Sequence record: MK250021.1
DNA: 64,000 nt
Reading direction: 5' to 3' (one strand)
The position numbers and the translations under genes are program-made. Positions within the stretch are counted from its first letter, which is position 1; each line of letters starts with the position of its first letter. The notes beneath the pieces were generated by a model. It ran no database searches, was not told the DNA's origin, and saw nothing but the letters and a program-made list of their open reading frames with translations. Below, one piece after another: positions 33,724-60,992 of this stretch.

Positions 33724-34110
33724 ATGGAAGATTTTAGTAAAGTAGAAGGTATTAAGACTAAAGGTGGAAAACCTTATGTGTAGAATAAAGAACTTATGAA
33801 AGAGATTGTACTTTCAAAGTAGAGAGATGAACTTACATATAACGCTGTTGTTATGCTTTAGTTAATTGCCGAAAATTTAGCAAAGAAAAAACATTATAAA
33901 TGTCAAGAGGATAAAGAAGATTGCATACAAACAGCAATGATGGATGTTGCCATGTATTGGAGAAGCTTTGACCCTGAGAGATTTAATAATCCATTTGCTT
34001 ATTATACAAGTATGTTATGTAATGGATTATCAAAAGGATGGAATAAGATATATGGTAAATTTAAAGCATCTGAGATGACAAGTCTTGACAACAATATACA
34101 TTCATTTTAA
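33724..34110 (+). CDS. T4 gp55-like late sigma factor, 128 aa; code 15
   Basis: YVQNKEL, ELT..A..MLQLIAENL, KEDCIQTA, SFDPERFNNPFAYYT; three TAG; absent from track. Confidence 0.8.
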
Positions 34111-42761: not shown

Positions 42762-43523
42762 ATGTCTAAAGATGATTTAGTAAATATACAAGAACAACCA
42801 GGAATTTATATGATTTAGAATGATATAAATAAAAAATGTTATATAGGCTAGAGTATAAATTTACATACAAGATTGTTACATCATATAAATAATTCTATAA
42901 ATAATCGTTATAATGCACCAATATATAGAGCATTTAAAAAATATGGTATAGAAAATTTTTCTGTATATATTTTAAAAAAATTTGATAATCCTATAACTAC
43001 ATATATTAAAGAATAGTTAGATATTTATGAGAAGAAATATATTAATGAATATAATAGTTATGGAAGCACGGGATATAATCAAACAAAAGGTGGTGATGGA
43101 GGTATAGATGGATATAAATTTACTAAAGAACAAAAATTAACAATTTCTAAAAATTCGTATAAAATATAGAATGATGGTAGAAATACAATATATTGTTATG
43201 ATATAAAAAATAATAAATTTATTGAATCAACATCATTATAGGAATTAAAACGATAGTTAAATGTTAATTTTAGAACAGGATGTATTAGAAATTTATTAAT
43301 ATATAATCAATATATTTTATCACGTTCAAAAGATGATTTATTATAGAAAATTAATAAGTATAATAATAAATTATAGGAGTATAATACAAATGGTTGTAGT
43401 AAATTAACTCATGAAATGAAAGATGATATAATTAATAATATATCAGAAAAAGAATTTCTTAGTAAATATAATGTATGTAAATCTACATATTATCATTATA
43501 AAGAAAAATTAAATATATCTTAA
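42762..43523 (+). CDS. GIY-YIG homing endonuclease, 253 aa; code 15
   Basis: PGIYMIQN..KCYIGQS..R, KYGIENF, EKKYI, GYNQTKGG; about 8 TAG; absent from track. Confidence 0.9.
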
Positions 43524-43546: not shown

Positions 43547-43618
43547 TGGGGATTAGTATAGTGGTCAGTACAGAGGTCTCTAAAACCTTTAGGCCGAGTT
43601 CGAGTCTCGGATCCCCAA
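43547..43618 (+). tRNA. Amber suppressor tRNA (anticodon CTA), Gln-type
   Basis: TGGGGAT/ATCCCCA acceptor, loop ctCTAaa (43580-82), T arm ccgag-ttcgagt-ctcgg. Confidence 0.95.
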
Positions 43619-43660
43619 CAATTAAATGACATAAGTAATATTTTAAAGATTTGATGAATT

Positions 43661-45474: not shown

Positions 45475-45881
45475 GGGGATGAATTTGGATTTGCTTATTA
45501 ATTATGTGGTAATAAATCGTGTAGGAAAGTTAATAGCCTTTTGTAGTAATACAAAGAAACTTAGCAAATAAATTTAAATGACGACGAAATAGAATTTCGT
45601 ATGGCAGCTTAATCCTGATAGGATTGGTAATATACACCCATTGAAGCATTTGCTCCTTATACGGTAAGTTTGAGCATTGCCACGGAGTTCGTAAGAGTGA
45701 TAATCTCTGTTAAATAAAACTCTTACATATACTTATTCATTGTCCAATAAGAGTGATTATGACATTAAACTGTTTAACTCTAATAACACAGATATAAATG
45801 AAAACTAATAAAGACATACGCACGTAGATAGTTTATTATTGACATGTTAGTAATACGTGGTTTCGAGTACCACCATCTCCA
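45475..45881 (+). ncRNA. ssrA: tmRNA
   Basis: GGGGATG/CATCTCC acceptor with G3.U70, GGATTTG, T arm gtggt-ttcgagt-accac, tag ORF 45580-45612 DDEIEFRMAA-TAA. Confidence 0.92.
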
Positions 45882-46020
45882 CATTTTTAGATTATATTTC
45901 ATAATATAGAATTTTTAATTGTTTAATTTTGTAAATGAGTTGTATGTTTAGATAAACATATGACTCATTTTTTTGTATAATAATAAATAAGATAATAAAA
46001 CTAAATATAAGCATAAATAT

Positions 46021-51802: not shown

Positions 51803-51931
51803 ATGAAAACTTTAAATATGACATATTGTATACATCCAGTTTGTGGTATGGTTCACATGTTCCCATGTGGAGGTGGTCGACCTATGTCTTTACTTGAGGA
51901 TTTAAAGTTTTCTTGTATGTTGCAATCATAA
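51803..51931 (+). CDS. Putative leader peptide, 42 aa
   Basis: MKTLNMTYCIHPVCGMVHMFPCGGGRPMSLLEDLKFSCMLQS just before a terminator. Confidence 0.5.
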   Translation: MKTLNMTYCIHPVCGMVHMFPCGGGRPMSLLEDLKFSCMLQS

Positions 51932-51960
51932 CCGGTTAACTCAACATATATACAATTTTT

Positions 51961-52010
51961 AAACCTCAAGTAGAAAATAGCAGAAAATCTACTTGAGGTT
52001 TTATTTTTTA
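51961..52010 (+). terminator. Terminator/attenuator hairpin ahead of tRNA cluster
   Basis: 14-bp aaacctcaagtaga/tctacttgaggttt plus T tract. Confidence 0.8.
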
Positions 52011-52014
52011 ATAT

Positions 52015-52087
52015 GGTCCGTCTGGTGTAATTGGTAACATGACAGATTGTGGTTCTGTTGTTCAGGGTTCGAGCCCCTAACGTGACC
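52015..52087 (+). tRNA. tRNA-His(GTG), irregular acceptor stem
   Basis: acaga-ttGTGgt-tctgt; G-1:C73. Confidence 0.8.
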
Positions 52088-52106
52088 CAAAATATTATTA
52101 ATATTT

Positions 52107-52183
52107 AGCGTAGTGGCCCAGTTGGTCTAAGGCACCTGTTTTGGGAACAGGTTAGATCGCACGTTCGAATCGTGTCTACGCTA
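52107..52183 (+). tRNA. tRNA-Pro(TGG)
   Basis: agcgtag/ctacgct; cctgt-ttTGGga-acagg. Confidence 0.92.
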
Positions 52184-52297
52184 CAGAATAGAGTTCTTAT
52201 GTTATCCTTACATAACTAAAAGAACTAAAACTTAAGATGGTAAGGCATCTATATAATGGAAGTTCACGCCCAAGGGAAGATTTATAAGTTATAATTT

Positions 52298-52372
52298 ACT
52301 CTGTTAACTCAATTGGATTAGAGTATTTCGCTACGAACGAAAAGGTTGTGAGTTCGATTCTTACACAGAGTA
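52298..52372 (+). tRNA. tRNA-Arg(ACG)
   Basis: actctgt/acagagt; tttcg-ctACGaa-cgaaa. Confidence 0.92.
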
Positions 52373-52381
52373 CAAGTAAAT

Positions 52382-52454
52382 ATCTCTATAGCTCAAAAGA
52401 ATAGAGCAGTTCTCTCCTAAAGAACAGATAACAGTTTGATTCTGTTTGGAGATA
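52382..52454 (+). tRNA. tRNA-Arg(CCT)
   Basis: atctcta/tggagat; gttct-ctCCTaa-agaac; T loop TTTGATT. Confidence 0.85.
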
Positions 52455-52541
52455 CAAACAAAATTAACATTATTAATATAGACTTTTATCTATTAATTGA
52501 ATATATTATAATGTAATTTGAATTTTAAATACTATTAAAAT

Positions 52542-52950
52542 GTAGGGGAGTAGAGTTCCCATCATTTAAAGAGTTTCGAGAAGAAGGTATTGTATGTAAA
52601 AGCATTAAGTTTCGTTTAGCTGACGAAATGTGACCACGCGGTGATGGTATTCATGTACATAGGTCCATCCGTATAACTTCAGGGAATCGTAAGCATTAAT
52701 CTTGGCGAGTACAGTTTTTAGTCTGAAATGACGAATTTTCCTACTGGTTGCTCAATATGATATTAAGAGTCGGAGATAATTATTTGTAAGTTCCACAATT
52801 ACGAGAGGAAAATGGAATTAAGTTGAAGGAATAACGTGATTATTCTTGGTGTGATTAGGAGAACGAAAATAACCAGTATGTATGGTGTACGTGTGCATAC
52901 AGAAACAAAGCAAATAATAGCCCTTAGAGAATTTGCCGAGTAAAGGACAT
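52542..52950 (+). ncRNA. Unidentified structured non-coding region
   Basis: GC-richer, several hairpins, closing stem 52542-49/52737-44. Confidence 0.45.
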
Positions 52951-52971
52951 TAATAGTATTTTTATTTATTT

Positions 52972-53049
52972 GCAGTATTGGTGTAGCTGGAGGCGCATTC
53001 CTGACTTCCACTCAGGCGGCTTGCGCGAGTTCGATTCTCGCATACTGCT
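52972..53049 (+). tRNA. tRNA-Gly(TCC)
   Basis: gcagtat/atactgc; cctga-ctTCCac-tcagg; U73. Confidence 0.92.
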
Positions 53050-53123
53050 CATAATAAGGTAGAGTATCAATGAATGATAGAGAATAAGTTCCTGTCTGAG
53101 ATCAACCTATCTGTAGTATTTAG

Positions 53124-53149
53124 ATAATTTTATGTATACATAAAATTAT
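53124..53149. repeat. Perfect 26-bp palindrome
   Basis: ataattttatgta|tacataaaattat. Confidence 0.9.
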
Positions 53150-53258
53150 AACGAAGTTTATATTACCTGTAGTCGTAATATTCAAATCGTTCGTTGACAT
53201 AGTTATTCCGTGATGTAGTAGAGAGTTATAATCAGCATATAACAGACGGAATATTTTT

Positions 53259-53331
53259 GCGGAAGTATATCAATGGTTAGATAGATACGTTGCCAACGTA
53301 TAGGTTGTGAGTTCGAGTCTCATTTTCCGCT
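53259..53331 (+). tRNA. tRNA-Gly(GCC)
   Basis: gcggaag/tttccgc; atacg-ttGCCaa-cgtat; U73. Confidence 0.92.
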
Positions 53332-53474
53332 CTATAAACGTTTCGAGGTTTTAAAGTTGAATGTACCACCTTGCGCTTGTGTTACTATTCACCTTTGAGT
53401 AATAGTAAAAAACTTATGGTATCAAGGATGTTTTCTACGTTGTTACATCCATTTTTTTGAATATGATAGAATAT

Positions 53475-53621
53475 GAGAGTCAATACAGCAAATTAAATTG
53501 ATAGATAATGTTTGAAGATTATACACAAAAAGACTCTTGAATCAAATTATAATGGGAGGCAATACAGCAAATTTTGTATTAAGGATTATTTTGCTAAAAT
53601 AATATTCTATACGCCTCCTGA
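53475..53621 (+). repeat. Two tandem structured AATACAGCAAATT elements
   Basis: 13-nt identical core, different but self-complementary closing stems, each followed by TGA. Confidence 0.75.
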
Positions 53622-53626
53622 TACTT

Positions 53627-53710
53627 GACGAGTTGCTGAGAATTGGTTAATCGCACGATCTGCAAAATCGTTGGTCATATGACATGTCGGTTCGAGTCCG
53701 ACACTCGTCT
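53627..53710 (+). tRNA. tRNA-Cys(GCA) with long variable arm
   Basis: gacgagt/actcgtc; acgat-ctGCAaa-atcgt; 14-nt variable region; U73. Confidence 0.88.
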
Positions 53711-53743
53711 CTTTAGATTAATATTTTAAAATACTATTATAAG

Positions 53744-54004
53744 ATGAAGAAATTATTTTCTTTTATATTTTGTACAATAATGATTACATCATTATTTGGA
53801 TGTGCAACAAAACAAGATACAATTAGTTACCTTGATAATTATGTACATAAAAATATTTCTGAAAATTGTATAAACATTTTCAGTAATCAAAGATATAATG
53901 AATATATTGATACTGTTACTAATATTAAATATTATGTTTATATAGATTATAATAGTAACATCAATATAATAGATAAAAGATTTCCGAGGTATACAGCTCG
54001 TTAA
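53744..54004 (+). CDS. Small putative lipoprotein
   Basis: MKKLFSFIF...LFGC lipobox-like. Confidence 0.65.
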   Translation: MKKLFSFIFCTIMITSLFGCATKQDTISYLDNYVHKNISENCINIFSNQRYNEYIDTVTNIKYYVYIDYNSNINIIDKRFPRYTAR

Positions 54005-54302
54005 AAGAGGTTGACTTGTATATTCTACATTACCTACTGTATAACAATATATGAGTGTACATGTGAAAAGATACACCATGTTCTATTAATATAAAAATGT
54101 ACATATATAGGGTAACAATTATATTAATATCAGATGCATGACATATATGAATATAATAACGAATTCGTGAAATGACTATTGTTTTTAGTTGCTTGGAAAC
54201 GGCGAACTTAGTTTTATCAATAGAGGAAGTATAATATTAAAACAGTTAAATGTAAATCTTTCTGAGACAATGGGGACAACTTGTAGTAAGAGAGTATTTT
54301 TA

Positions 54303-54417
54303 GCTAGTATAGTTTAGTGGCAAAACACCCAAATCCCAGGGATAAGAGATGGTTTGAGTTGTAGTGTACAATACAATATACAGAAGATTTTAGTGAGTTC
54401 GATTCTCACTGCTAGCT
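54303..54417 (+). ncRNA. tRNA-like RNA with expanded anticodon/variable region
   Basis: Acceptor gctagta/tgctagc, D arm and T arm intact; ~65 nt between D and T arms. Confidence 0.7.
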
Positions 54418-54423
54418 CAATAT

Positions 54424-54551
54424 GAAGTGCGTAGTTTAAATGGTAAAACATCCTTTGAGTAGGACTCTGACGAGAGATAGATAACAATGCTAGACTCTAT
54501 TTAATTCCATTGTTTTATTAATGAGTATAGGTTCGAATCCTATGGTACTTC
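54424..54551 (+). ncRNA. tRNA-like RNA with multi-stem insert replacing anticodon arm
   Basis: gaagtgc/gtacttc, D arm and T arm atagg-ttcgaat-cctat intact; ~76-nt insert. Confidence 0.7.
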
Positions 54552-54841
54552 CAAATTTATATAGATAAAAAGATTCTGGTGATTAGATAAAACATTATAA
54601 GAAAAGAGAAAAAACTTAGGTAACTGCAGATAACTAAGGGTCGTAAGAGTATATGAAGAAAGATGAACTATGGATACCTCCTTATAATGCGTTTTATCAA
54701 TAATTAAAGTAGTCTATAATATAAGTTCATTAACGTTATAGAAAAAACGAATATTGATAAGTCTACTATGCAGATGGGGCATTGAGAATGCCGTATAGTT
54801 CTAAAGCATCGTAAAACAGTTTATTTATATATTTTTAATAT

Positions 54842-54916
54842 GGCTAGATAGCTCAGTTCGGTTAGAGCGCGTGATTCATATCCACGAGGTCGTGTGTTCG
54901 ATCCACACTCTTGCTA
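54842..54916 (+). tRNA. tRNA-Met or Ile2 (CAT)
   Basis: ggctaga/tcttgct; loop ttCATat; T arm gtgtg-ttcgatc-cacac. Confidence 0.85.
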
Positions 54917-54995
54917 CAGTGTTTTTAGTTGTTTATTAATGATTTGAGATATATCAATTTTTGGTATATCTCTTTTTTATTTAGAAAATAATTTG

Positions 54996-55003
54996 TATCT
55001 TTG
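54996..55003 (+). promoter_or_regulatory. Bacteroidota sigmaA -7 element
   Basis: TATCTTTG before 55030. Confidence 0.7.
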
Positions 55004-58027: not shown

Positions 58028-60992
58028 AAGTAAATTAGTTTAGGAATTAATTTCTATTTTGGATAAACGAACATATCTCGCAAAGTAGGAATTAAATAAA
58101 GCTATTAATTTTGTAAAAACATATGATACATCTATAACAAATTTTATAAATAATGACTAGTTAAGATAGGATAATGTTGTAAATAACAGAATAGATGAAT
58201 TATCTAGAAAACATACATCTGATTTAACAACTTTAAATAATAATATAGATGATAAATTTACAAATGTAAAATCAGAAGTTAATAAATCAATTAAAGACAC
58301 AAAACGTGAATTAGAACAAAATATCATCAATACAAAAAATGATACATATGATTATATCGATGATTAGCAGGATTTAACAGATAGATCAATAAGATCTATT
58401 GATACTAAATATAAATTATTAGTTGACGATTTATCTACAAGAACAGATACGAGTATACATGATTTATATACAAAGCTTACTAATGGTATTGATGATTTAT
58501 ATTAGAAGTATGATGCATCGATAAAAGATATATCAAGTCGTGTAGATTCATCTTTTAGAACAATGATACATTATATAGATACATCCGTAGCAATTCTAAG
58601 AGAACAAACTATTACAAATGCAAAAATATTAGAAGATAATTTAAATGCATCTATTAATAGAATTAAAGGCGGATTAGATGTTAATATTACAAATATATAT
58701 GATTATATAGACGATTAGTTAGATGATATTGATAATAAATTTGGTGATATTAAAAAAGAACAAAATGTTCAAAATATATCCATAAATGATATAAGTTCTA
58801 ATGTTGATATTAAATATAAGTATTTAGAGACATTAATTAATAAATCATCCGGTGATATGGGTGATATAGTTGTAGATGGTATAGCGGGATTAAATAAAAA
58901 AATCGAAGAACTGACATTAACAGTTAATAATAATTATACTGATGTTACCGGGAAAATTAATAATACAAATACAAGTGTAACAAAATTGGAAGAAGGAACT
59001 TCTTCCATTTCTGATACATTAAAAAACCATATAAAAGAAGCTAAAGAATATTAGAATAATACAAATAGTAGTATTAGAACAATAAATTCATCTGTTAATG
59101 ATTTGGAAAATCTCACAAATAAGTTAAAAACAACAGTTTCTGAACATACAGATAATATAGGAGATTTAAAGAAAAAAGTAGTTAAAAATATAGAAAATAT
59201 AGATAACGCTAATACATCTATTAATATATTAGAAAGAACTACAAAAAATATAAGTACCGATTTAAATTCATTAAATAAAAAATTTGATACTTTAGTTAAT
59301 TCAGAAAACACTAATAATGTTATAGACACATTTAAGGAAGTAGAAAGTTTTCTTGATTCTATATCAGATTCAAGTACATTAACAGAAATGTTAAAAAATA
59401 TGTCTGATGATATTAGTAATAATATTAATATAAAAATAGAAGAATTAAATAAAAATATTACTGATATTAAAACTGATATTACAGGAAATGTTTCTATAGA
59501 TATTAATGCTATTAAAGATACAATAAAAATAATTAATACATCTATTAATAAAATAGATTCATCATTATTAGATATTAGTACCAAGTTAAATTCATCTATT
59601 AATGAAGTATATAATTATGTCAATACTGTAGTAATTAATAATATTAATAGTTCATTTAATACAGTTAATACATCAATATTAGATATATCTAATAGATTAA
59701 ATAATTTAAATAAGTCTTATAATAAGACTTTAATTTTTGCAAATGATATTAATTCATCATTAAATGATATTTCTACAAAATTCAATGAATTTAAAGACAA
59801 TATAATAACTAATAATGAAAATATAAATAGTTCAATAATTAATATAAATTCATCTATTTTAATTATTGATAATTCTATAGATCTTATTAATACATCTATT
59901 TTAGATATATCATCAAAGTTAAATGATGCTACTAACAATTTAACAAATACAACAAGTAGAGTTGCAAATTTAGAATTAAATAATGTTACAAGTTTAACTA
60001 ATACTACAGGTACGGAAACAAATATATGGAATGATGATAATTAGATAAACCAAAATTCATATGTCATTGATAAAAATATATTTAATGTCACAGAAAACGG
60101 AGTTAAAATAGAAAAAGAGATAAAAACAGTAAATCCTAATATTATAAAGGAAATTACAAATAATGAGAAAATAATAACATCTACATTAAATAATATTAAT
60201 TCAAGTATTAATATTATAAATACTAGTGTAAATACATTAGAAACAAACATTGATTCAATTAAAAATGAATTTGAAAATATTGATGTATTAAATACAGAAT
60301 ATTTTAATAATAAAAATGAAGAAACGACAAATGGATTTAATACTATAGGTACATGCTTTGATTTTATTATTGATAATATGTATTATAAAAAGCCAGAAAA
60401 TATTAATGTGTCATTTAATGTTTCACCAACTAATATTATAAAAGGTAAACGTACAAATGTAATATTTACATATAAAATTAATAATTATACAGATTATATT
60501 GAAGATATTAAATATAATAATATCAATACAGATTTATTAGAAAATACAGAAAATTTAATAATAAGTGATAATATTAGCAGAGTATTATATATAAAAACAA
60601 ATTATAAAGATAAGAAAGGTGCATAGCCTGAAAATAATCCTTATAATATTACGAAAACAGTTATAGCAACATCAGAATTATATTATTGGACATCTGATAA
60701 TATAGTATTTGAATCTAATTATACAAATGAAAATAAACCTAATTGGGTCTTATATACAGGAACATCATTTACATTTGATAATAAAGGTATTAACAAATAT
60801 GTGTTCTTTGTATCAACATTAAATAAGCAGGAATCTGAATTCTTTATTTATAAGCATGGTAGTAGTCCTACATTAGGCGGTGGTATTACAAATTTGGGCA
60901 AAATAACAATTAAAATATATGATGATATACTTACCTATTATTTATATAGAACGAATAATGTATTAGGAGGTAATTATGATATTAAATTTTAA
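58017..60992 (+). CDS. Long coiled-coil fibre-like protein, 991 aa; code 15
   Basis: Track ORFs 58857, 59103, 60378, 60801 share one frame joined at TAG; ends TAA. Confidence 0.85.

What the first reader, a model, noticed from the sequence alone, without database searches (positions are those of the whole stretch)
53475..53621. Tandem novel RNA module: covarying stem, AATACAGCAAATT core and anticodon-like loop
Copy 1 closes with agagtc/gactct and copy 2 with ggaggc/gcctcc: different sequence, same pairing. Both share the 13-nt core and a 3' TGA. Each holds an inner hairpin. Copy 2 is ttatt-ttGCTaa-aataa, a 7-nt anticodon-type loop; copy 1 has a less perfect loop gttTGAag. GCT and TGA are both Ser anticodons. 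Candidate anticodon-stem-loop decoys for host anticodon nucleases, or protein-binding small RNAs embedded among tRNAs.
Basis: partly seen in the sequence, partly recalled or inferred. Interest (0 to 1): 0.78.

Follow-up and report, generated by a model that had tools for sequence, protein, structure and literature searches.

The report
Y-RNA-like small RNAs in megaphage
The two tandem elements in this Prevotella megaphage (Lak-B2) tRNA array belong to a widespread, undescribed phage small-RNA family that travels with a Ro60-like (DUF2828) protein gene and has the same design as the enigmatic Class I RNAs of Dictyostelium.

Summary
The window is Prevotella phage Lak-B2. At 53475-53541 and 53554-53621 (+) lie two ~67-nt modules. 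Each has a 7-bp closing stem, a 3-nt linker, an invariant ACAGCAA, a variable hairpin, the 3' stem strand and then UG.

They are not tRNAs and reach no Rfam threshold. They are not orphans either. The same module type lies on the gene's strand beside a PF11443/DUF2828 gene in 27 of 31 phage loci (52 hits on that strand, 2 on the other, about 3 in shuffles).

A covariance model built only from six non-Lak modules ranks the two window modules first and second in the 64 kb (E 5e-5 and 9e-3). Across 35 distinct sequences the stem is 98.8% paired, and every pair shows compensatory changes.

The DUF2828 protein folds like Ro60/TROVE+vWA; its 13 best PDB matches are all Ro60. Neighbouring genes include RtcB and RNA ligases, plus tRNA arrays. 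Longer family members carry YrlA-like tRNA mimics.

Best reading: these are Y-RNA-like partners of a phage Ro60-like protein acting in tRNA repair or quality control. The "Ser anticodon decoy" idea is not supported as stated.

The motif, stem and termini match Dictyostelium Class I RNA (GTTGRC-CTTACAGCAA...GTCAAC-TG).

The parts
53475..53541 (+). Module 1 (copy 1): a complete small-RNA unit of the ACAGCAA family
   Evidence: Sequence. Hit of model R1, built without Lak sequences: 21.6 bits, E 0.009, second best in the window. Conserved in Lak-A1, A2 and C1.
53475..53481 (+). Module 1 closing stem, 5' strand GAGAGTC; pairs with 53532-53538 (GACTCTT)
   Evidence: 7 bp including the outer G.U. 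These stem columns covary across the family.
53485..53491 (+).
   Evidence: Invariant in the alignments. Predicted unpaired.
53505..53522 (+). Module 1 variable inner hairpin (ATAAT / 8-nt loop / ATTAT)
   Evidence: Present in the fold. Not conserved in Lak-A or Lak-C, which have a different hairpin with a TGGG loop.
53532..53541 (+). Module 1 closing stem 3' strand GACTCTT followed by GAA
53554..53621 (+). Module 2 (copy 2): a complete small-RNA unit of the ACAGCAA family
   Evidence: Best hit of model R1 in the window: 30.3 bits, E 5.3e-5. MFE z = -3.0. Sub-threshold hit to Rfam Dicty_Class_I_RNA, 19.9 bits.
53554..53560 (+). Module 2 closing stem, 5' strand GGGAGGC; pairs with 53613-53619 (GCCTCCT)
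   Evidence: Compensatory changes in Lak-A and Lak-C (GGGAGAT / GTCTCCT). In run X3, 53559 G>A occurs with 53614 C>T.
53564..53570 (+). Module 2 invariant core ACAGCAA (the 13-mer is 53561-53573)
53582..53608 (+). Module 2 long inner hairpin: AGG + ATTATT / loop TTGCTAA (53591-53597) / AATAAT + ATTCT
   Evidence: The inner stem covaries between lineages: TATT/AATA in Lak-B, CATA/TATG in Lak-A, CGAT/ATCG in L128. The loop YUGCUAA recurs in distant phages.
53259..53332 (+). Flanking tRNA-Gly(GCC), upstream member of the tRNA array
   Evidence: ARAGORN and Rfam.
53627..53711 (+). Flanking tRNA-Cys(GCA); it starts 6 nt after module 2, so its 5' processing would define module 2's 3' tail
   Evidence: ARAGORN. 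The processing step is inference.
53426..53458 (+). Conserved terminator-like hairpin (GGATGT...ACATCC) plus a U7 run, just upstream of module 1; it ends a conserved element that begins near 53353
   Evidence: Two compensatory pairs between Lak-B and Lak-A/C.

Best explanation
The two modules are small non-coding RNAs of about 65-70 nt. They belong to a phage RNA family that acts as the Y-RNA-like partner of a Ro60-like ring protein, the product of the PF11443/DUF2828 gene. In Lak phages that gene lies elsewhere in the genome and has a third module about 110 nt upstream of it.

Proposed mechanism:
1. The modules are transcribed with the tRNA array.
2. They are released by the enzymes that trim the neighbouring tRNAs.
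3. The 7-bp terminal stem and the adjacent single-stranded ACAGCAA form the docking site for the Ro60-like protein, as the terminal stem and 5'-strand motif of Y RNAs do for Ro60.
4. The variable body is either a plain or anticodon-arm-like hairpin, as in the two Lak modules, or a permuted tRNA mimic, as in longer relatives. It gates the protein or tethers it to tRNA-handling enzymes or substrates.
5. The resulting particle works with RNA ligases (RtcB, Rnl) in repair or quality control of tRNAs during infection, possibly against host tRNA-cleaving defences.

Shown here: the family, its structure, its link to the gene, the protein's fold, and the gene neighbourhood. Inferred: transcription and processing, direct binding, and the biological role.
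For: 1. The family exists and the window modules belong to it.
- My descriptor (stem, ACAGCAA, stem, UG) gives 52 hits on the gene's strand against 2 on the opposite strand in 31 DUF2828 loci (181 kb). Shuffles give about 3.
- Model R1, built from six non-Lak modules, ranks the two window modules first and second of 128 kb searched (E 5.3e-5 and 9e-3).
- All 39 R1 hits at E <= 0.05 across the loci lie on the gene's strand.
- The stem is 98.8% paired. All 7 pairs show double changes; 0 of 500 shuffles reach this, and slid controls give 36-46%.

2. The associated protein has the Ro60 fold.
- All homologues carry PF11443 and PF25043.
- It matches phrog_850, 'RNA-binding protein'.
- The AlphaFold model has pLDDT 85.5.
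- The 13 best Foldseek PDB hits are all Ro60/TROVE over the full length (E 3e-8 to 4e-5). The best are the Thermus phage phiLo Ro60 entries.
- The profile search of PDB sequences puts Ro60 on top.
- Atlas clusters mix TROVE and DUF2828.

3. Whole Lak genomes hold exactly three modules: the pair in the tRNA array and one upstream of the DUF2828 gene.

4. Context.
- RNA ligase (L152), RtcB (L155) and RNA ligase (Salmonella phage 7t3) lie next to the gene.
- tRNA arrays follow the modules in many loci.
- In E. coli Felixounavirus ECML-1 the modules are interspersed among tRNAs, as in Lak.

5. Longer members contain T-arm, capped acceptor and D-arm in YrlA order. They give full-length sub-threshold YrlA hits (41 bits at E 8e-6; 37.8 bits at E 7e-5).

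6. Precedent. Phage phiLo Ro60 binds two phage-encoded Y-like RNAs and recruits host PNPase (PMC12135203). Bacterial Rsr, YrlA and RtcB are encoded together (PMC4201824). TROVE proteins in jumbo phages have been placed in RNA repair (PMC7824862).

7. Weak hint of expression. A contig of an RNA-seq library covers 53408-53574.
Against: - No direct evidence of transcription, of the RNA ends, or of binding. The RNA-seq contig could derive from DNA in the library.
- The pair is not adjacent to the DUF2828 gene in Lak. The third module and gene are at about 59 kb and the pair at about 424 kb in Lak-B4, so the link is in trans and rests on family membership.
- The canonical Ro60-binding motif (GNCGAA) is absent. 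ACAGCAA as the docking site is inferred only from its position and invariance.
- Copy 1 alone folds no better than shuffled sequence.
- No RNA ligase or RtcB gene was found among the ten window ORFs scanned.
- The alignment used for the pair counts was fitted to the model.
Confidence: 0.62

Rival explanations
1. Anticodon-stem-loop decoys. The inner hairpins mimic anticodon arms of particular tRNAs and soak up host anticodon nucleases, independently of any Ro-like protein.
For: - Hairpins with 7-nt YU...R. loops are enriched in the family: 28 of 48 modules against 4.2 +/- 1.9 in shuffles.
- Recurrent loops read like anticodon loops: YUGCUAA, CUGUUAA, CUGUAAA, CUUUUAA.
- The modules sit in tRNA arrays.
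- RNA-repair ligases are neighbours in other phages, which fits a conflict over tRNA cleavage.
Against: - The invariant parts are the closing stem and ACAGCAA, not the loops.
- Copy 1's loop is not conserved even within Lak.
- Orthologous copy-2 loops read GCU, UUU and UGU.
- Many members have no such hairpin, or carry T/D-arm mimics instead.
- The loop consensus is also complementary to the core (UUGCU with AGCAA), which offers a structural reason for its conservation.
- The tight link to the DUF2828 gene goes unexplained.
Confidence: 0.12
2. Degenerate tRNA genes or tRNA-derived relics in the array with no function of their own. In this view the closing stem is an old acceptor stem.
For: - They lie between tRNA genes.
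- The 7-bp terminal stem is followed by an unpaired purine.
- Copy 2 in Lak-B can be drawn with a D-arm-like hairpin (TACA/TGTA) and an anticodon-like arm.
- ARAGORN in mitochondrial mode calls copy 2, though on the minus strand.
- Some relatives embed true tRNA-like domains.
Against: - No tRNA call by ARAGORN in standard or relaxed mode, nor by Rfam tRNA at E <= 10.
- There is no T-arm.
- The D-arm-like pairing is absent in Lak-A.
- The same stem + ACAGCAA + UG design is kept in Mycobacterium, Staphylococcus, Campylobacter, E. coli and Prevotella phages with compensatory changes. That indicates selection on this design, not decay.
Confidence: 0.04
3. Cis-acting processing or punctuation elements, or a leader-peptide or attenuator unit (ATG AGA GTC ...), that control expression of the tRNA array rather than acting in trans.
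For: - Each Lak module begins with ATGAGAGTC or ATGGGAGGC.
- A conserved terminator-like hairpin with U7 lies just upstream.
- The modules abut tRNA genes.
Against: - The reading frame is not kept. The linker between stem and core is 2, 3 or 4 nt, and Lak-A1 and C1 copy 2 lack the ATG.
- The modules also occur upstream of, or directly downstream of, the protein gene without tRNAs.
- Family members with YrlA-like tRNA mimics point to trans-acting RNAs.
Confidence: 0.05

Closest known systems
Bacterial and phage Y RNAs (YrlA/YrlB, Rfam RF02553) bound by Ro60/Rsr, including Thermus phage phiLo Ro60 with Yrl1 and Yrl2
   Same: - Small RNAs encoded next to, and on the strand of, a Ro60-fold (TROVE + vWA) protein gene.
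- A terminal stem with a short conserved motif on or next to its 5' strand.
- A variable body that in many members is a permuted tRNA mimic (T-arm, capped acceptor, D-arm).
- Several different RNAs per genome.
- RtcB or RNA ligase genes nearby (PMC4201824, PMC12135203).
   Different: - The protein is the divergent DUF2828/PF11443 branch, about 10-13% identical to solved Ro60s.
- The conserved motif is ACAGCAA, not GNCGAA(N)G or CGAA.
- The two Lak modules have no tRNA-like domain and do not match RF02553.
- Even the tRNA-like relatives reach only 25-41 bits against a threshold of 69.
- The Lak pair is unlinked from the protein gene and sits inside a tRNA array.
Dictyostelium Class I RNAs (Rfam RF01414)
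   Same: The design matches almost point for point.
- Length is about 60 nt.
[quoted passage not shown] Its innermost pair is C-G and it has a purine start.
- An unpaired motif ending in UUACAGCAA follows the 5' strand directly.
- The interior is variable.
- The 3' end is CUG(U).
- The D. discoideum search pattern is GTTGRC-CTTACAGCAA...GTCAAC-TG (PMC5054030; PMC7919456).
- The RF01414 model hits phage modules over its full length: 35.1, 30.4, 27.5 and 24.6 bits. Window copy 2 scores 19.9 bits. RF01414 gave no hits outside the modules.
   Different: - All hits fall below the 41.5-bit threshold.
- The host is a eukaryote with its own DUSE promoter.
- The known direct binder is an RRM protein, Rnp1A.
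- The published view is that the class is unique to Dictyostelia.
- I could not test whether Dictyostelium has a DUF2828 protein.
- Lak-B has AAU where Dictyostelium has CUU before ACAGCAA.
Stable small RNAs encoded within phage tRNA clusters (T4 'species 1 and 2' RNAs; recalled from memory, not tested)
   Same: Small stable RNAs of unknown function co-located with phage tRNA genes, presumably processed with them.
   Different: No sequence comparison was done here and no known link to a Ro-like protein exists. This is only a lead.

Membership tests
ACAGCAA small-RNA family linked to DUF2828 genes (defined here) | 7-bp closing stem joining the 5' and 3' ends, with innermost pair C-G and outermost pair R-U | tested here: met
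   Copy 1 is GAGAGTC/GACTCTT and copy 2 is GGGAGGC/GCCTCCT. Family-wide covariation is shown.
ACAGCAA small-RNA family linked to DUF2828 genes (defined here) | Invariant ACAGCAA 2-4 nt after the 5' strand, and UG after the 3' strand | tested here: met
   Both copies have the linker AAT, then ACAGCAA, and the stem ends ...T followed by G.
ACAGCAA small-RNA family linked to DUF2828 genes (defined here) | Significant score with a covariance model built without the candidate sequences | tested here: met
   Model R1, from six non-Lak modules, gives 30.3 bits (E 5.3e-5) and 21.6 bits (E 9e-3). These are the top two hits of the window.
ACAGCAA small-RNA family linked to DUF2828 genes (defined here) | Location next to a PF11443/DUF2828 gene on the same strand | tested here: not met
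   The window has no such gene (tblastn). In Lak the gene lies far away with its own third module. The genome does encode the gene. In Felixounavirus the modules likewise spread into the tRNA array.
YrlA / Y RNA-like (Rfam RF02553) | Score at or above the Rfam gathering threshold (69 bits) | tested here: not met
   No hit on the modules at E <= 10. Relatives with tRNA-like inserts reach only 25-41 bits.
YrlA / Y RNA-like (Rfam RF02553) | tRNA-like domain with T-arm and D-arm | tested here: not met
   Neither window module has a T-loop or a D-arm. Related modules do.
YrlA / Y RNA-like (Rfam RF02553) | GNCGAA(N)G motif near the 5' end (PMC4201824) | tested here: not met
   The motif at that position is ACAGCAA.
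YrlA / Y RNA-like (Rfam RF02553) | Binding to a Ro60 orthologue | not testable with these tools
   Only the genomic association with a Ro60-fold protein is shown.
Dicty_Class_I_RNA (Rfam RF01414) | Score at or above the Rfam gathering threshold (41.5 bits) | tested here: not met
   Copy 2 scores 19.9 bits (E 2.6 in 3.4 kb) and copy 1 gives no hit. The best phage relative scores 35.1 bits.
Dicty_Class_I_RNA (Rfam RF01414) | Short terminal stem plus an adjacent 11-nt motif (CCUUACAGCAA), with T3, C6, C9, A10 and A11 nearly invariant | tested here: inconclusive
   The stem is met. In Lak-B the motif positions C6, C9, A10 and A11 are met, but position 3 is A. Lak-A copy 2 and many relatives have (A/C)UUACAGCAA, matching 9-10 of 11.
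Dicty_Class_I_RNA (Rfam RF01414) | DUSE promoter about 60 nt upstream; dictyostelid genome | tested here: not met
   The source is a phage genome, Lak-B2. This feature cannot apply.
tRNA (RF00005 / ARAGORN) | Cloverleaf with a T-arm, detected by tRNA finders | tested here: not met
   No call by ARAGORN in standard, intron or relaxed modes, nor by Rfam at E <= 10.

The most novel reading that the evidence does not exclude
The phage ACAGCAA RNAs and the Class I RNAs of dictyostelid amoebae may be one RNA family: Y-RNA-like ligands of Ro60-like DUF2828 proteins. If so, Class I RNAs would not be unique to Dictyostelia. They would gain a candidate protein partner and a candidate function, an RNA quality-control or repair particle. 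Phages with tractable hosts (E. coli, Staphylococcus, Mycobacterium) would become models for them.
Probability: 0.4. Interest if true: 0.9.

Novelty: new variant of a known kind. Interest (0 to 1): 0.78.

Why it matters
- It gives a function-linked identity to unannotated sequence in the tRNA arrays of megaphages and of common laboratory phages (Felix O1-like coliphages, Staphylococcus, Campylobacter and mycobacteriophages).
- It pairs a large family of 'DUF2828 / RNA-binding protein' genes (526 phage records) with a specific RNA ligand and a recognisable docking motif. Binding, structure and phage-fitness experiments can therefore be designed at once.
- It extends the Ro60-Y RNA principle to a divergent protein branch with a different RNA motif, set in a tRNA-repair context that is relevant to phage-host conflicts over tRNA cleavage.
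- If the match to Dictyostelium Class I RNAs reflects common descent or a common partner, a 20-year-old question about those RNAs becomes directly testable.

Tried and rejected
- The 14-mer CAATACAGCAAATT in viral contigs gave only chance hits. The longer pattern with the stem was needed.
- The window's own assembly is not held, and the nearest record, G001, lacks the region.
- tRNA reading: rejected.
- CRISPR-like repeat reading: rejected because the spacing between copies varies (72, 79 and about 113 nt) and each unit is closed by its own stem.
- Leader-peptide reading (MRVxTAN): rejected because the frame between the ATG and the core is not kept.
- A conserved D-arm-like hairpin in copy 2: rejected because it is absent in Lak-A.
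- Pairing of AAAUU with the 3' side, seen in L128 copy 1, is not conserved.
- MAFFT alignment of all modules misplaced the 3' strands. I therefore seeded the model with six modules of like length.
- Other R1 hits in the window and in the Lak genomes (42917-42972 minus strand, W03 91690, W02 139758, W01 414128) lack the core or lie in coding or AT-rich sequence: noise. The descriptor hit at 33920-34023 lies in coding sequence.
- The sequence search of PDB with the single protein found nothing. The profile and fold searches were needed.
- NCBIfam has no model for the protein.
- The Avesson 2011, Sim 2020 and Burroughs & Aravind 2016 papers and the Chen 2014 supplements are not held.
- I could not establish whether Dictyostelium encodes a PF11443 protein.
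- Public runs gave only contigs, so no RNA ends or strand could be read.
Full report
**Identity of the window.** Window positions 51900-55000 are 100% identical to Prevotella phage Lak-B2 (MK250021.1, 423900-427000). They are 99.2-99.5% identical to the other Lak-B genomes. Lak-A1, A2 and C1 match at about 80%. The records carry no annotation.

The finding lies in a + strand tRNA array holding His, Pro, two Arg, two Gly, Cys and Met genes. Its immediate neighbours are tRNA-Gly(GCC) at 53259-53332 and tRNA-Cys(GCA) at 53627-53711.

**The observation.**
- Copy 1 runs from 53475 to 53541. Its stem is GAGAGTC/GACTCTT, 7 bp with an outer G.U. A linker AAT and the core ACAGCAA follow, then an inner hairpin with an 8-nt loop, then the 3' strand followed by GA.
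- Copy 2 runs from 53554 to 53621. Its stem is GGGAGGC/GCCTCCT, with the same linker and core. A long inner hairpin ends in the 7-nt loop TTGCTAA, and the 3' strand is again followed by GA.
- The exact 13-mer occurs only at these two places in the window.
- Folding energy alone is convincing only for copy 2 (z = -3.0, against -0.6 for copy 1).
- Rfam has no match at gathering thresholds. At E <= 10 it gives only a weak match of copy 2 to Dictyostelium Class I RNA.
- ARAGORN finds no tRNA here in any sensible mode.

**Close relatives.** Lak-A1, A2 and C1 keep both copies at the same place.
- Copy 1's stem is unchanged, but its inner hairpin is replaced by a different one with a TGGG loop.
- Copy 2's stem becomes GGGAGAT/GTCTCCT, with one double and one single compensatory change.
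- Copy 2's inner stem changes from TATT/AATA to CATA/TATG, and the loop from TTGCTAA to CTTTTAA.
- A further Lak variant in a metagenome run changes 53559 G>A together with its pairing partner 53614 C>T. It reads TTTGTAA in the loop.
- The stems are therefore under selection for pairing. The 'anticodon' triplet is not conserved: GCU, UUU, UGU.

**The lead that opened the case.** A pattern made of part of the stem plus the core found a third, single module in Lak-A-like genomes. It lies about 110 nt upstream of a 453-aa ORF. The pattern also found three tandem modules directly downstream of a homologous ORF in an unrelated 99-kb viral contig, L128.
- That ORF matches phrog_850, 'RNA-binding protein' (E 1e-42).
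- All its homologues carry PF11443 (DUF2828) and PF25043 (DUF7788).

**Association of RNA and gene.** I fetched 31 viral loci that encode the protein at 24-100% identity. I scanned them with a simple descriptor: a stem of at least 6 bp, a gap of 0-4 nt, ACAGCAA, the returning strand within 140 nt, then UG.
- It gives 52 hits on the gene's strand and 2 on the other strand. Shuffled loci give 1-5 hits for both strands together.
- 27 of the 31 loci have at least one module, usually 1-4 in tandem, within about 430 nt up- or downstream of the gene.
- The tabulated termini show a common design: R-R-N-N-N-N-C, then 2-4 nt, ACAGCAA, the variable body, G-N-N-N-N-Y-U, and G(U/A).

**Independent membership test.** I built a covariance model (R1) from six modules of like length from five non-Lak contigs. 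Only the 7-bp stem was annotated.
- In the 64-kb window its two best hits are 53553-53622 (30.3 bits, E 5.3e-5) and 53474-53541 (21.6 bits, E 9e-3). The third hit is AT-rich noise.
- Over 28 sources, all 39 hits at E <= 0.05 lie on the gene's strand.
- On that alignment (35 distinct sequences) 98.8% of cells pair, and all 7 pairs show changes on both sides. There are 82 doubly changed cells against 25.5 +/- 3.7 in shuffles (0 of 500 reach the observed value). Sliding the partner by 1-3 columns drops pairing to 36-46%. The alignment is fitted to the model, but the margin is very large.
- In the complete Lak-B4, A1 and C1 genomes the model finds exactly three credible modules each: the pair in the tRNA array and the one upstream of the DUF2828 gene.
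- The window itself has no DUF2828 gene. In Lak-B4 the gene is at 58123-59469.

**The protein.**
- An AlphaFold2 model from a 21-sequence alignment has mean pLDDT 85.5.
- Its 13 best Foldseek matches in the PDB are all Ro60/TROVE proteins aligned over the full length. They are Thermus phage phiLo Ro60, Xenopus and human Ro60, and Deinococcus Rsr (E 3e-8 to 4e-5). vWA/MIDAS domains alone follow.
- A profile search of PDB sequences also puts Ro60 first (E 0.005).
- ESM-Atlas clusters mix TROVE and DUF2828 annotations.
- Homologues occur in 526 phage records. They include Felixounavirus, KVP40-like Vibrio phages, Campylobacter Fletchervirus, Staphylococcus phages, and mycobacteriophages where the gene is annotated 'Ro-like RNA binding protein'.

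**Neighbourhood.**
- Next to the gene lie an RNA ligase (L152, phrog_968, E 5e-63), an RtcB ligase (L155, E 1e-125), a phosphoesterase (L163) and an RNA ligase (Salmonella phage 7t3).
- tRNA arrays follow the modules in many loci.
- In E. coli phage ECML-1 the modules are interspersed among the tRNAs after the DUF2828 gene, which is the Lak arrangement.
- Staphylococcus phage S-CoN_Ph6 has three tandem modules. Campylobacter phage CP30A has one. Mycobacteriophage MiniMac has three, the middle one enclosing a tRNA-like domain.

**Two body types.**
- Minimal members, like the two Lak modules, carry one or two hairpins.
- Longer members carry a T-arm, a capped acceptor stem and a D-arm in the permuted order known from YrlA. 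They give full-length sub-threshold YrlA hits: 41 bits (E 8e-6), 37.8 bits and 25 bits, plus a partial hit in MiniMac.
- Hairpins with 7-nt YU...R. loops are enriched: 28 of 48 modules against 4.2 +/- 1.9 in shuffles. Some are T-loops. The others cluster around YUG(C/U)(U/A)AA.
- The loop YUGCUAA of Lak-B copy 2 recurs in gut-phage contigs, in CP30A and in MiniMac.
- These loops are more complementary to the core than shuffled loops are (UUGCU with AGCAA; mean 3.7 against 2.8 bp). A loop-core pseudoknot is therefore an alternative to 'anticodon mimicry'. That test is confounded by common descent and remains only an idea.

**Comparison with what is known.**
- Y RNAs bind Ro60 through a terminal stem and a 5'-strand motif: GGUCCGA in animals, GNCGAA(N)G in bacteria. 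Bacterial YrlA adds a tRNA mimic and is encoded with rsr and rtcBA (PMC4201824).
- Phage phiLo Ro60 binds two phage Y-like RNAs that were found through a CGAA motif, and it recruits host PNPase (PMC12135203).
- Jumbo-phage TROVE proteins have been assigned to RNA repair (PMC7824862).
- The present family keeps that logic, but with a divergent protein branch and a different motif. The literature search for DUF2828 returned only unrelated plant and tardigrade papers. No Rfam family covers these RNAs.

**The Dictyostelium match.** The only Rfam model that recognises the minimal modules is Dictyostelium Class I RNA (RF01414).
- It gives full-length hits of 35.1, 30.4, 27.5 and 24.6 bits on phage modules and nowhere else in those loci. 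Window copy 2 scores 19.9 bits.
- The published description fits point for point: about 60 nt, a 6-bp covarying terminal stem, a conserved 5' G preceded by A, an unpaired 11-nt motif next to the 5' strand, a variable interior and a CUGU end (PMC7919456).
- The D. discoideum search pattern is GTTGRC-CTTACAGCAA ... GTCAAC-TG (PMC5054030).
- That class is reported as unique to Dictyostelia, and its function is unknown. I could not test whether dictyostelids encode a DUF2828 protein, so homology remains a hypothesis.

**Mechanism.**
- Shown: the RNA design and its covariation; the link to the Ro60-fold gene; the ligase and tRNA context; the tRNA mimics in relatives.
- Inferred: co-transcription with the tRNA array and trimming by tRNA-processing enzymes (tRNA-Cys starts 6 nt after module 2); docking of the Ro-like protein on the stem plus ACAGCAA; a role as gate or tether in tRNA repair or quality control during infection.
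- Expression evidence is limited to one contig of an RNA-seq library that covers 53408-53574.

**Verdict.** It is partly wrong: they are not Ser-anticodon decoys. The element is a new variant of the Ro60-Y RNA kind, widespread in phages and undescribed, with a possible and striking tie to Dictyostelium Class I RNAs.

Noticed in passing
window 53353-53460: Between tRNA-Gly(GCC) and module 1 lies another element conserved between Lak-B and Lak-A/C. It has a long-range pairing GTACCA/TGGTAC and a terminal hairpin (GGATGT...ACATCC) with two compensatory pairs, followed by U7. It looks like an intrinsic terminator or a further small RNA. No Rfam match.
   Followed up: partly
window 53627-53711: The tRNA-Cys(GCA) is 85 nt long. 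Rfam scores it as tRNA-Sec-like (38.3 bits, below threshold) rather than as an ordinary tRNA, which suggests an unusual long-arm structure.
   Followed up: no
window 54303-54417; L120-L122: Rfam finds a 115-nt tRNA (37.5 bits) that ARAGORN misses, probably because it contains an intron. In Lak-A and Lak-C, ARAGORN calls intron-containing tRNAs (Ile, Asn, and an 'Ala' with an 87-nt intron where Lak-A1 has tRNA-Gly(TCC)).
   Followed up: no
window 43547-43619 and 45475-45884: A suppressor tRNA with anticodon CUA (called 'Pyl' by ARAGORN) and a tmRNA gene (47.3 bits, just at threshold) lie upstream of the tRNA array. This fits TAG recoding (code 15): many long ORFs in the window are open only when TAG is read through.
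   Followed up: partly
L149 4174-4241, L158 3948-4009 and 4087-4164, window 53555-53620: The Rfam model of Dictyostelium Class I RNA recognises the minimal phage modules over its full length (up to 35 bits; threshold 41.5). The stem, the UUACAGCAA motif and the CUG(U) end coincide with the published Class I design.
   Followed up: partly
window 53591-53597 with 53566-53570; other modules listed: The recurrent loop YUGCUAA is complementary to the invariant core (UUGCU with AGCAA; CUGU with ACAG). A loop-core pseudoknot is possible and would compete with the 'anticodon mimic' reading.
   Followed up: partly
L190 2980-3069 and 3199-3327 (Staphylococcus phage S-CoN_Ph6): Two short annotated 'hypothetical protein' CDSs overlap the three tandem RNA modules downstream of the 'RNA-binding protein' gene. 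They are probably mis-annotations of the RNA genes.
   Followed up: no
L163 2899-3009: One module encloses a sequence that matches the ordinary, non-permuted tRNA model over its full length (54.6 bits). It has an anticodon-like loop CUUUAAC, so it is a whole tRNA-like body held inside the ACAGCAA closing stem.
   Followed up: no
L128 (reverse strand) ~3090 onward: In this 99-kb viral contig the three modules are followed by a gene for elongation factor Tu (its product begins [27 protein letters not shown]). This is an unusual neighbour, and the contig may be a provirus or host-derived.
   Followed up: no
L136 5481-6497: Downstream of the Lak-A-like DUF2828 gene lies a 338-aa ORF with six TAG codons read through. 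Its N-terminus looked to me like a GIY-YIG-type nuclease; this was not tested.
   Followed up: no
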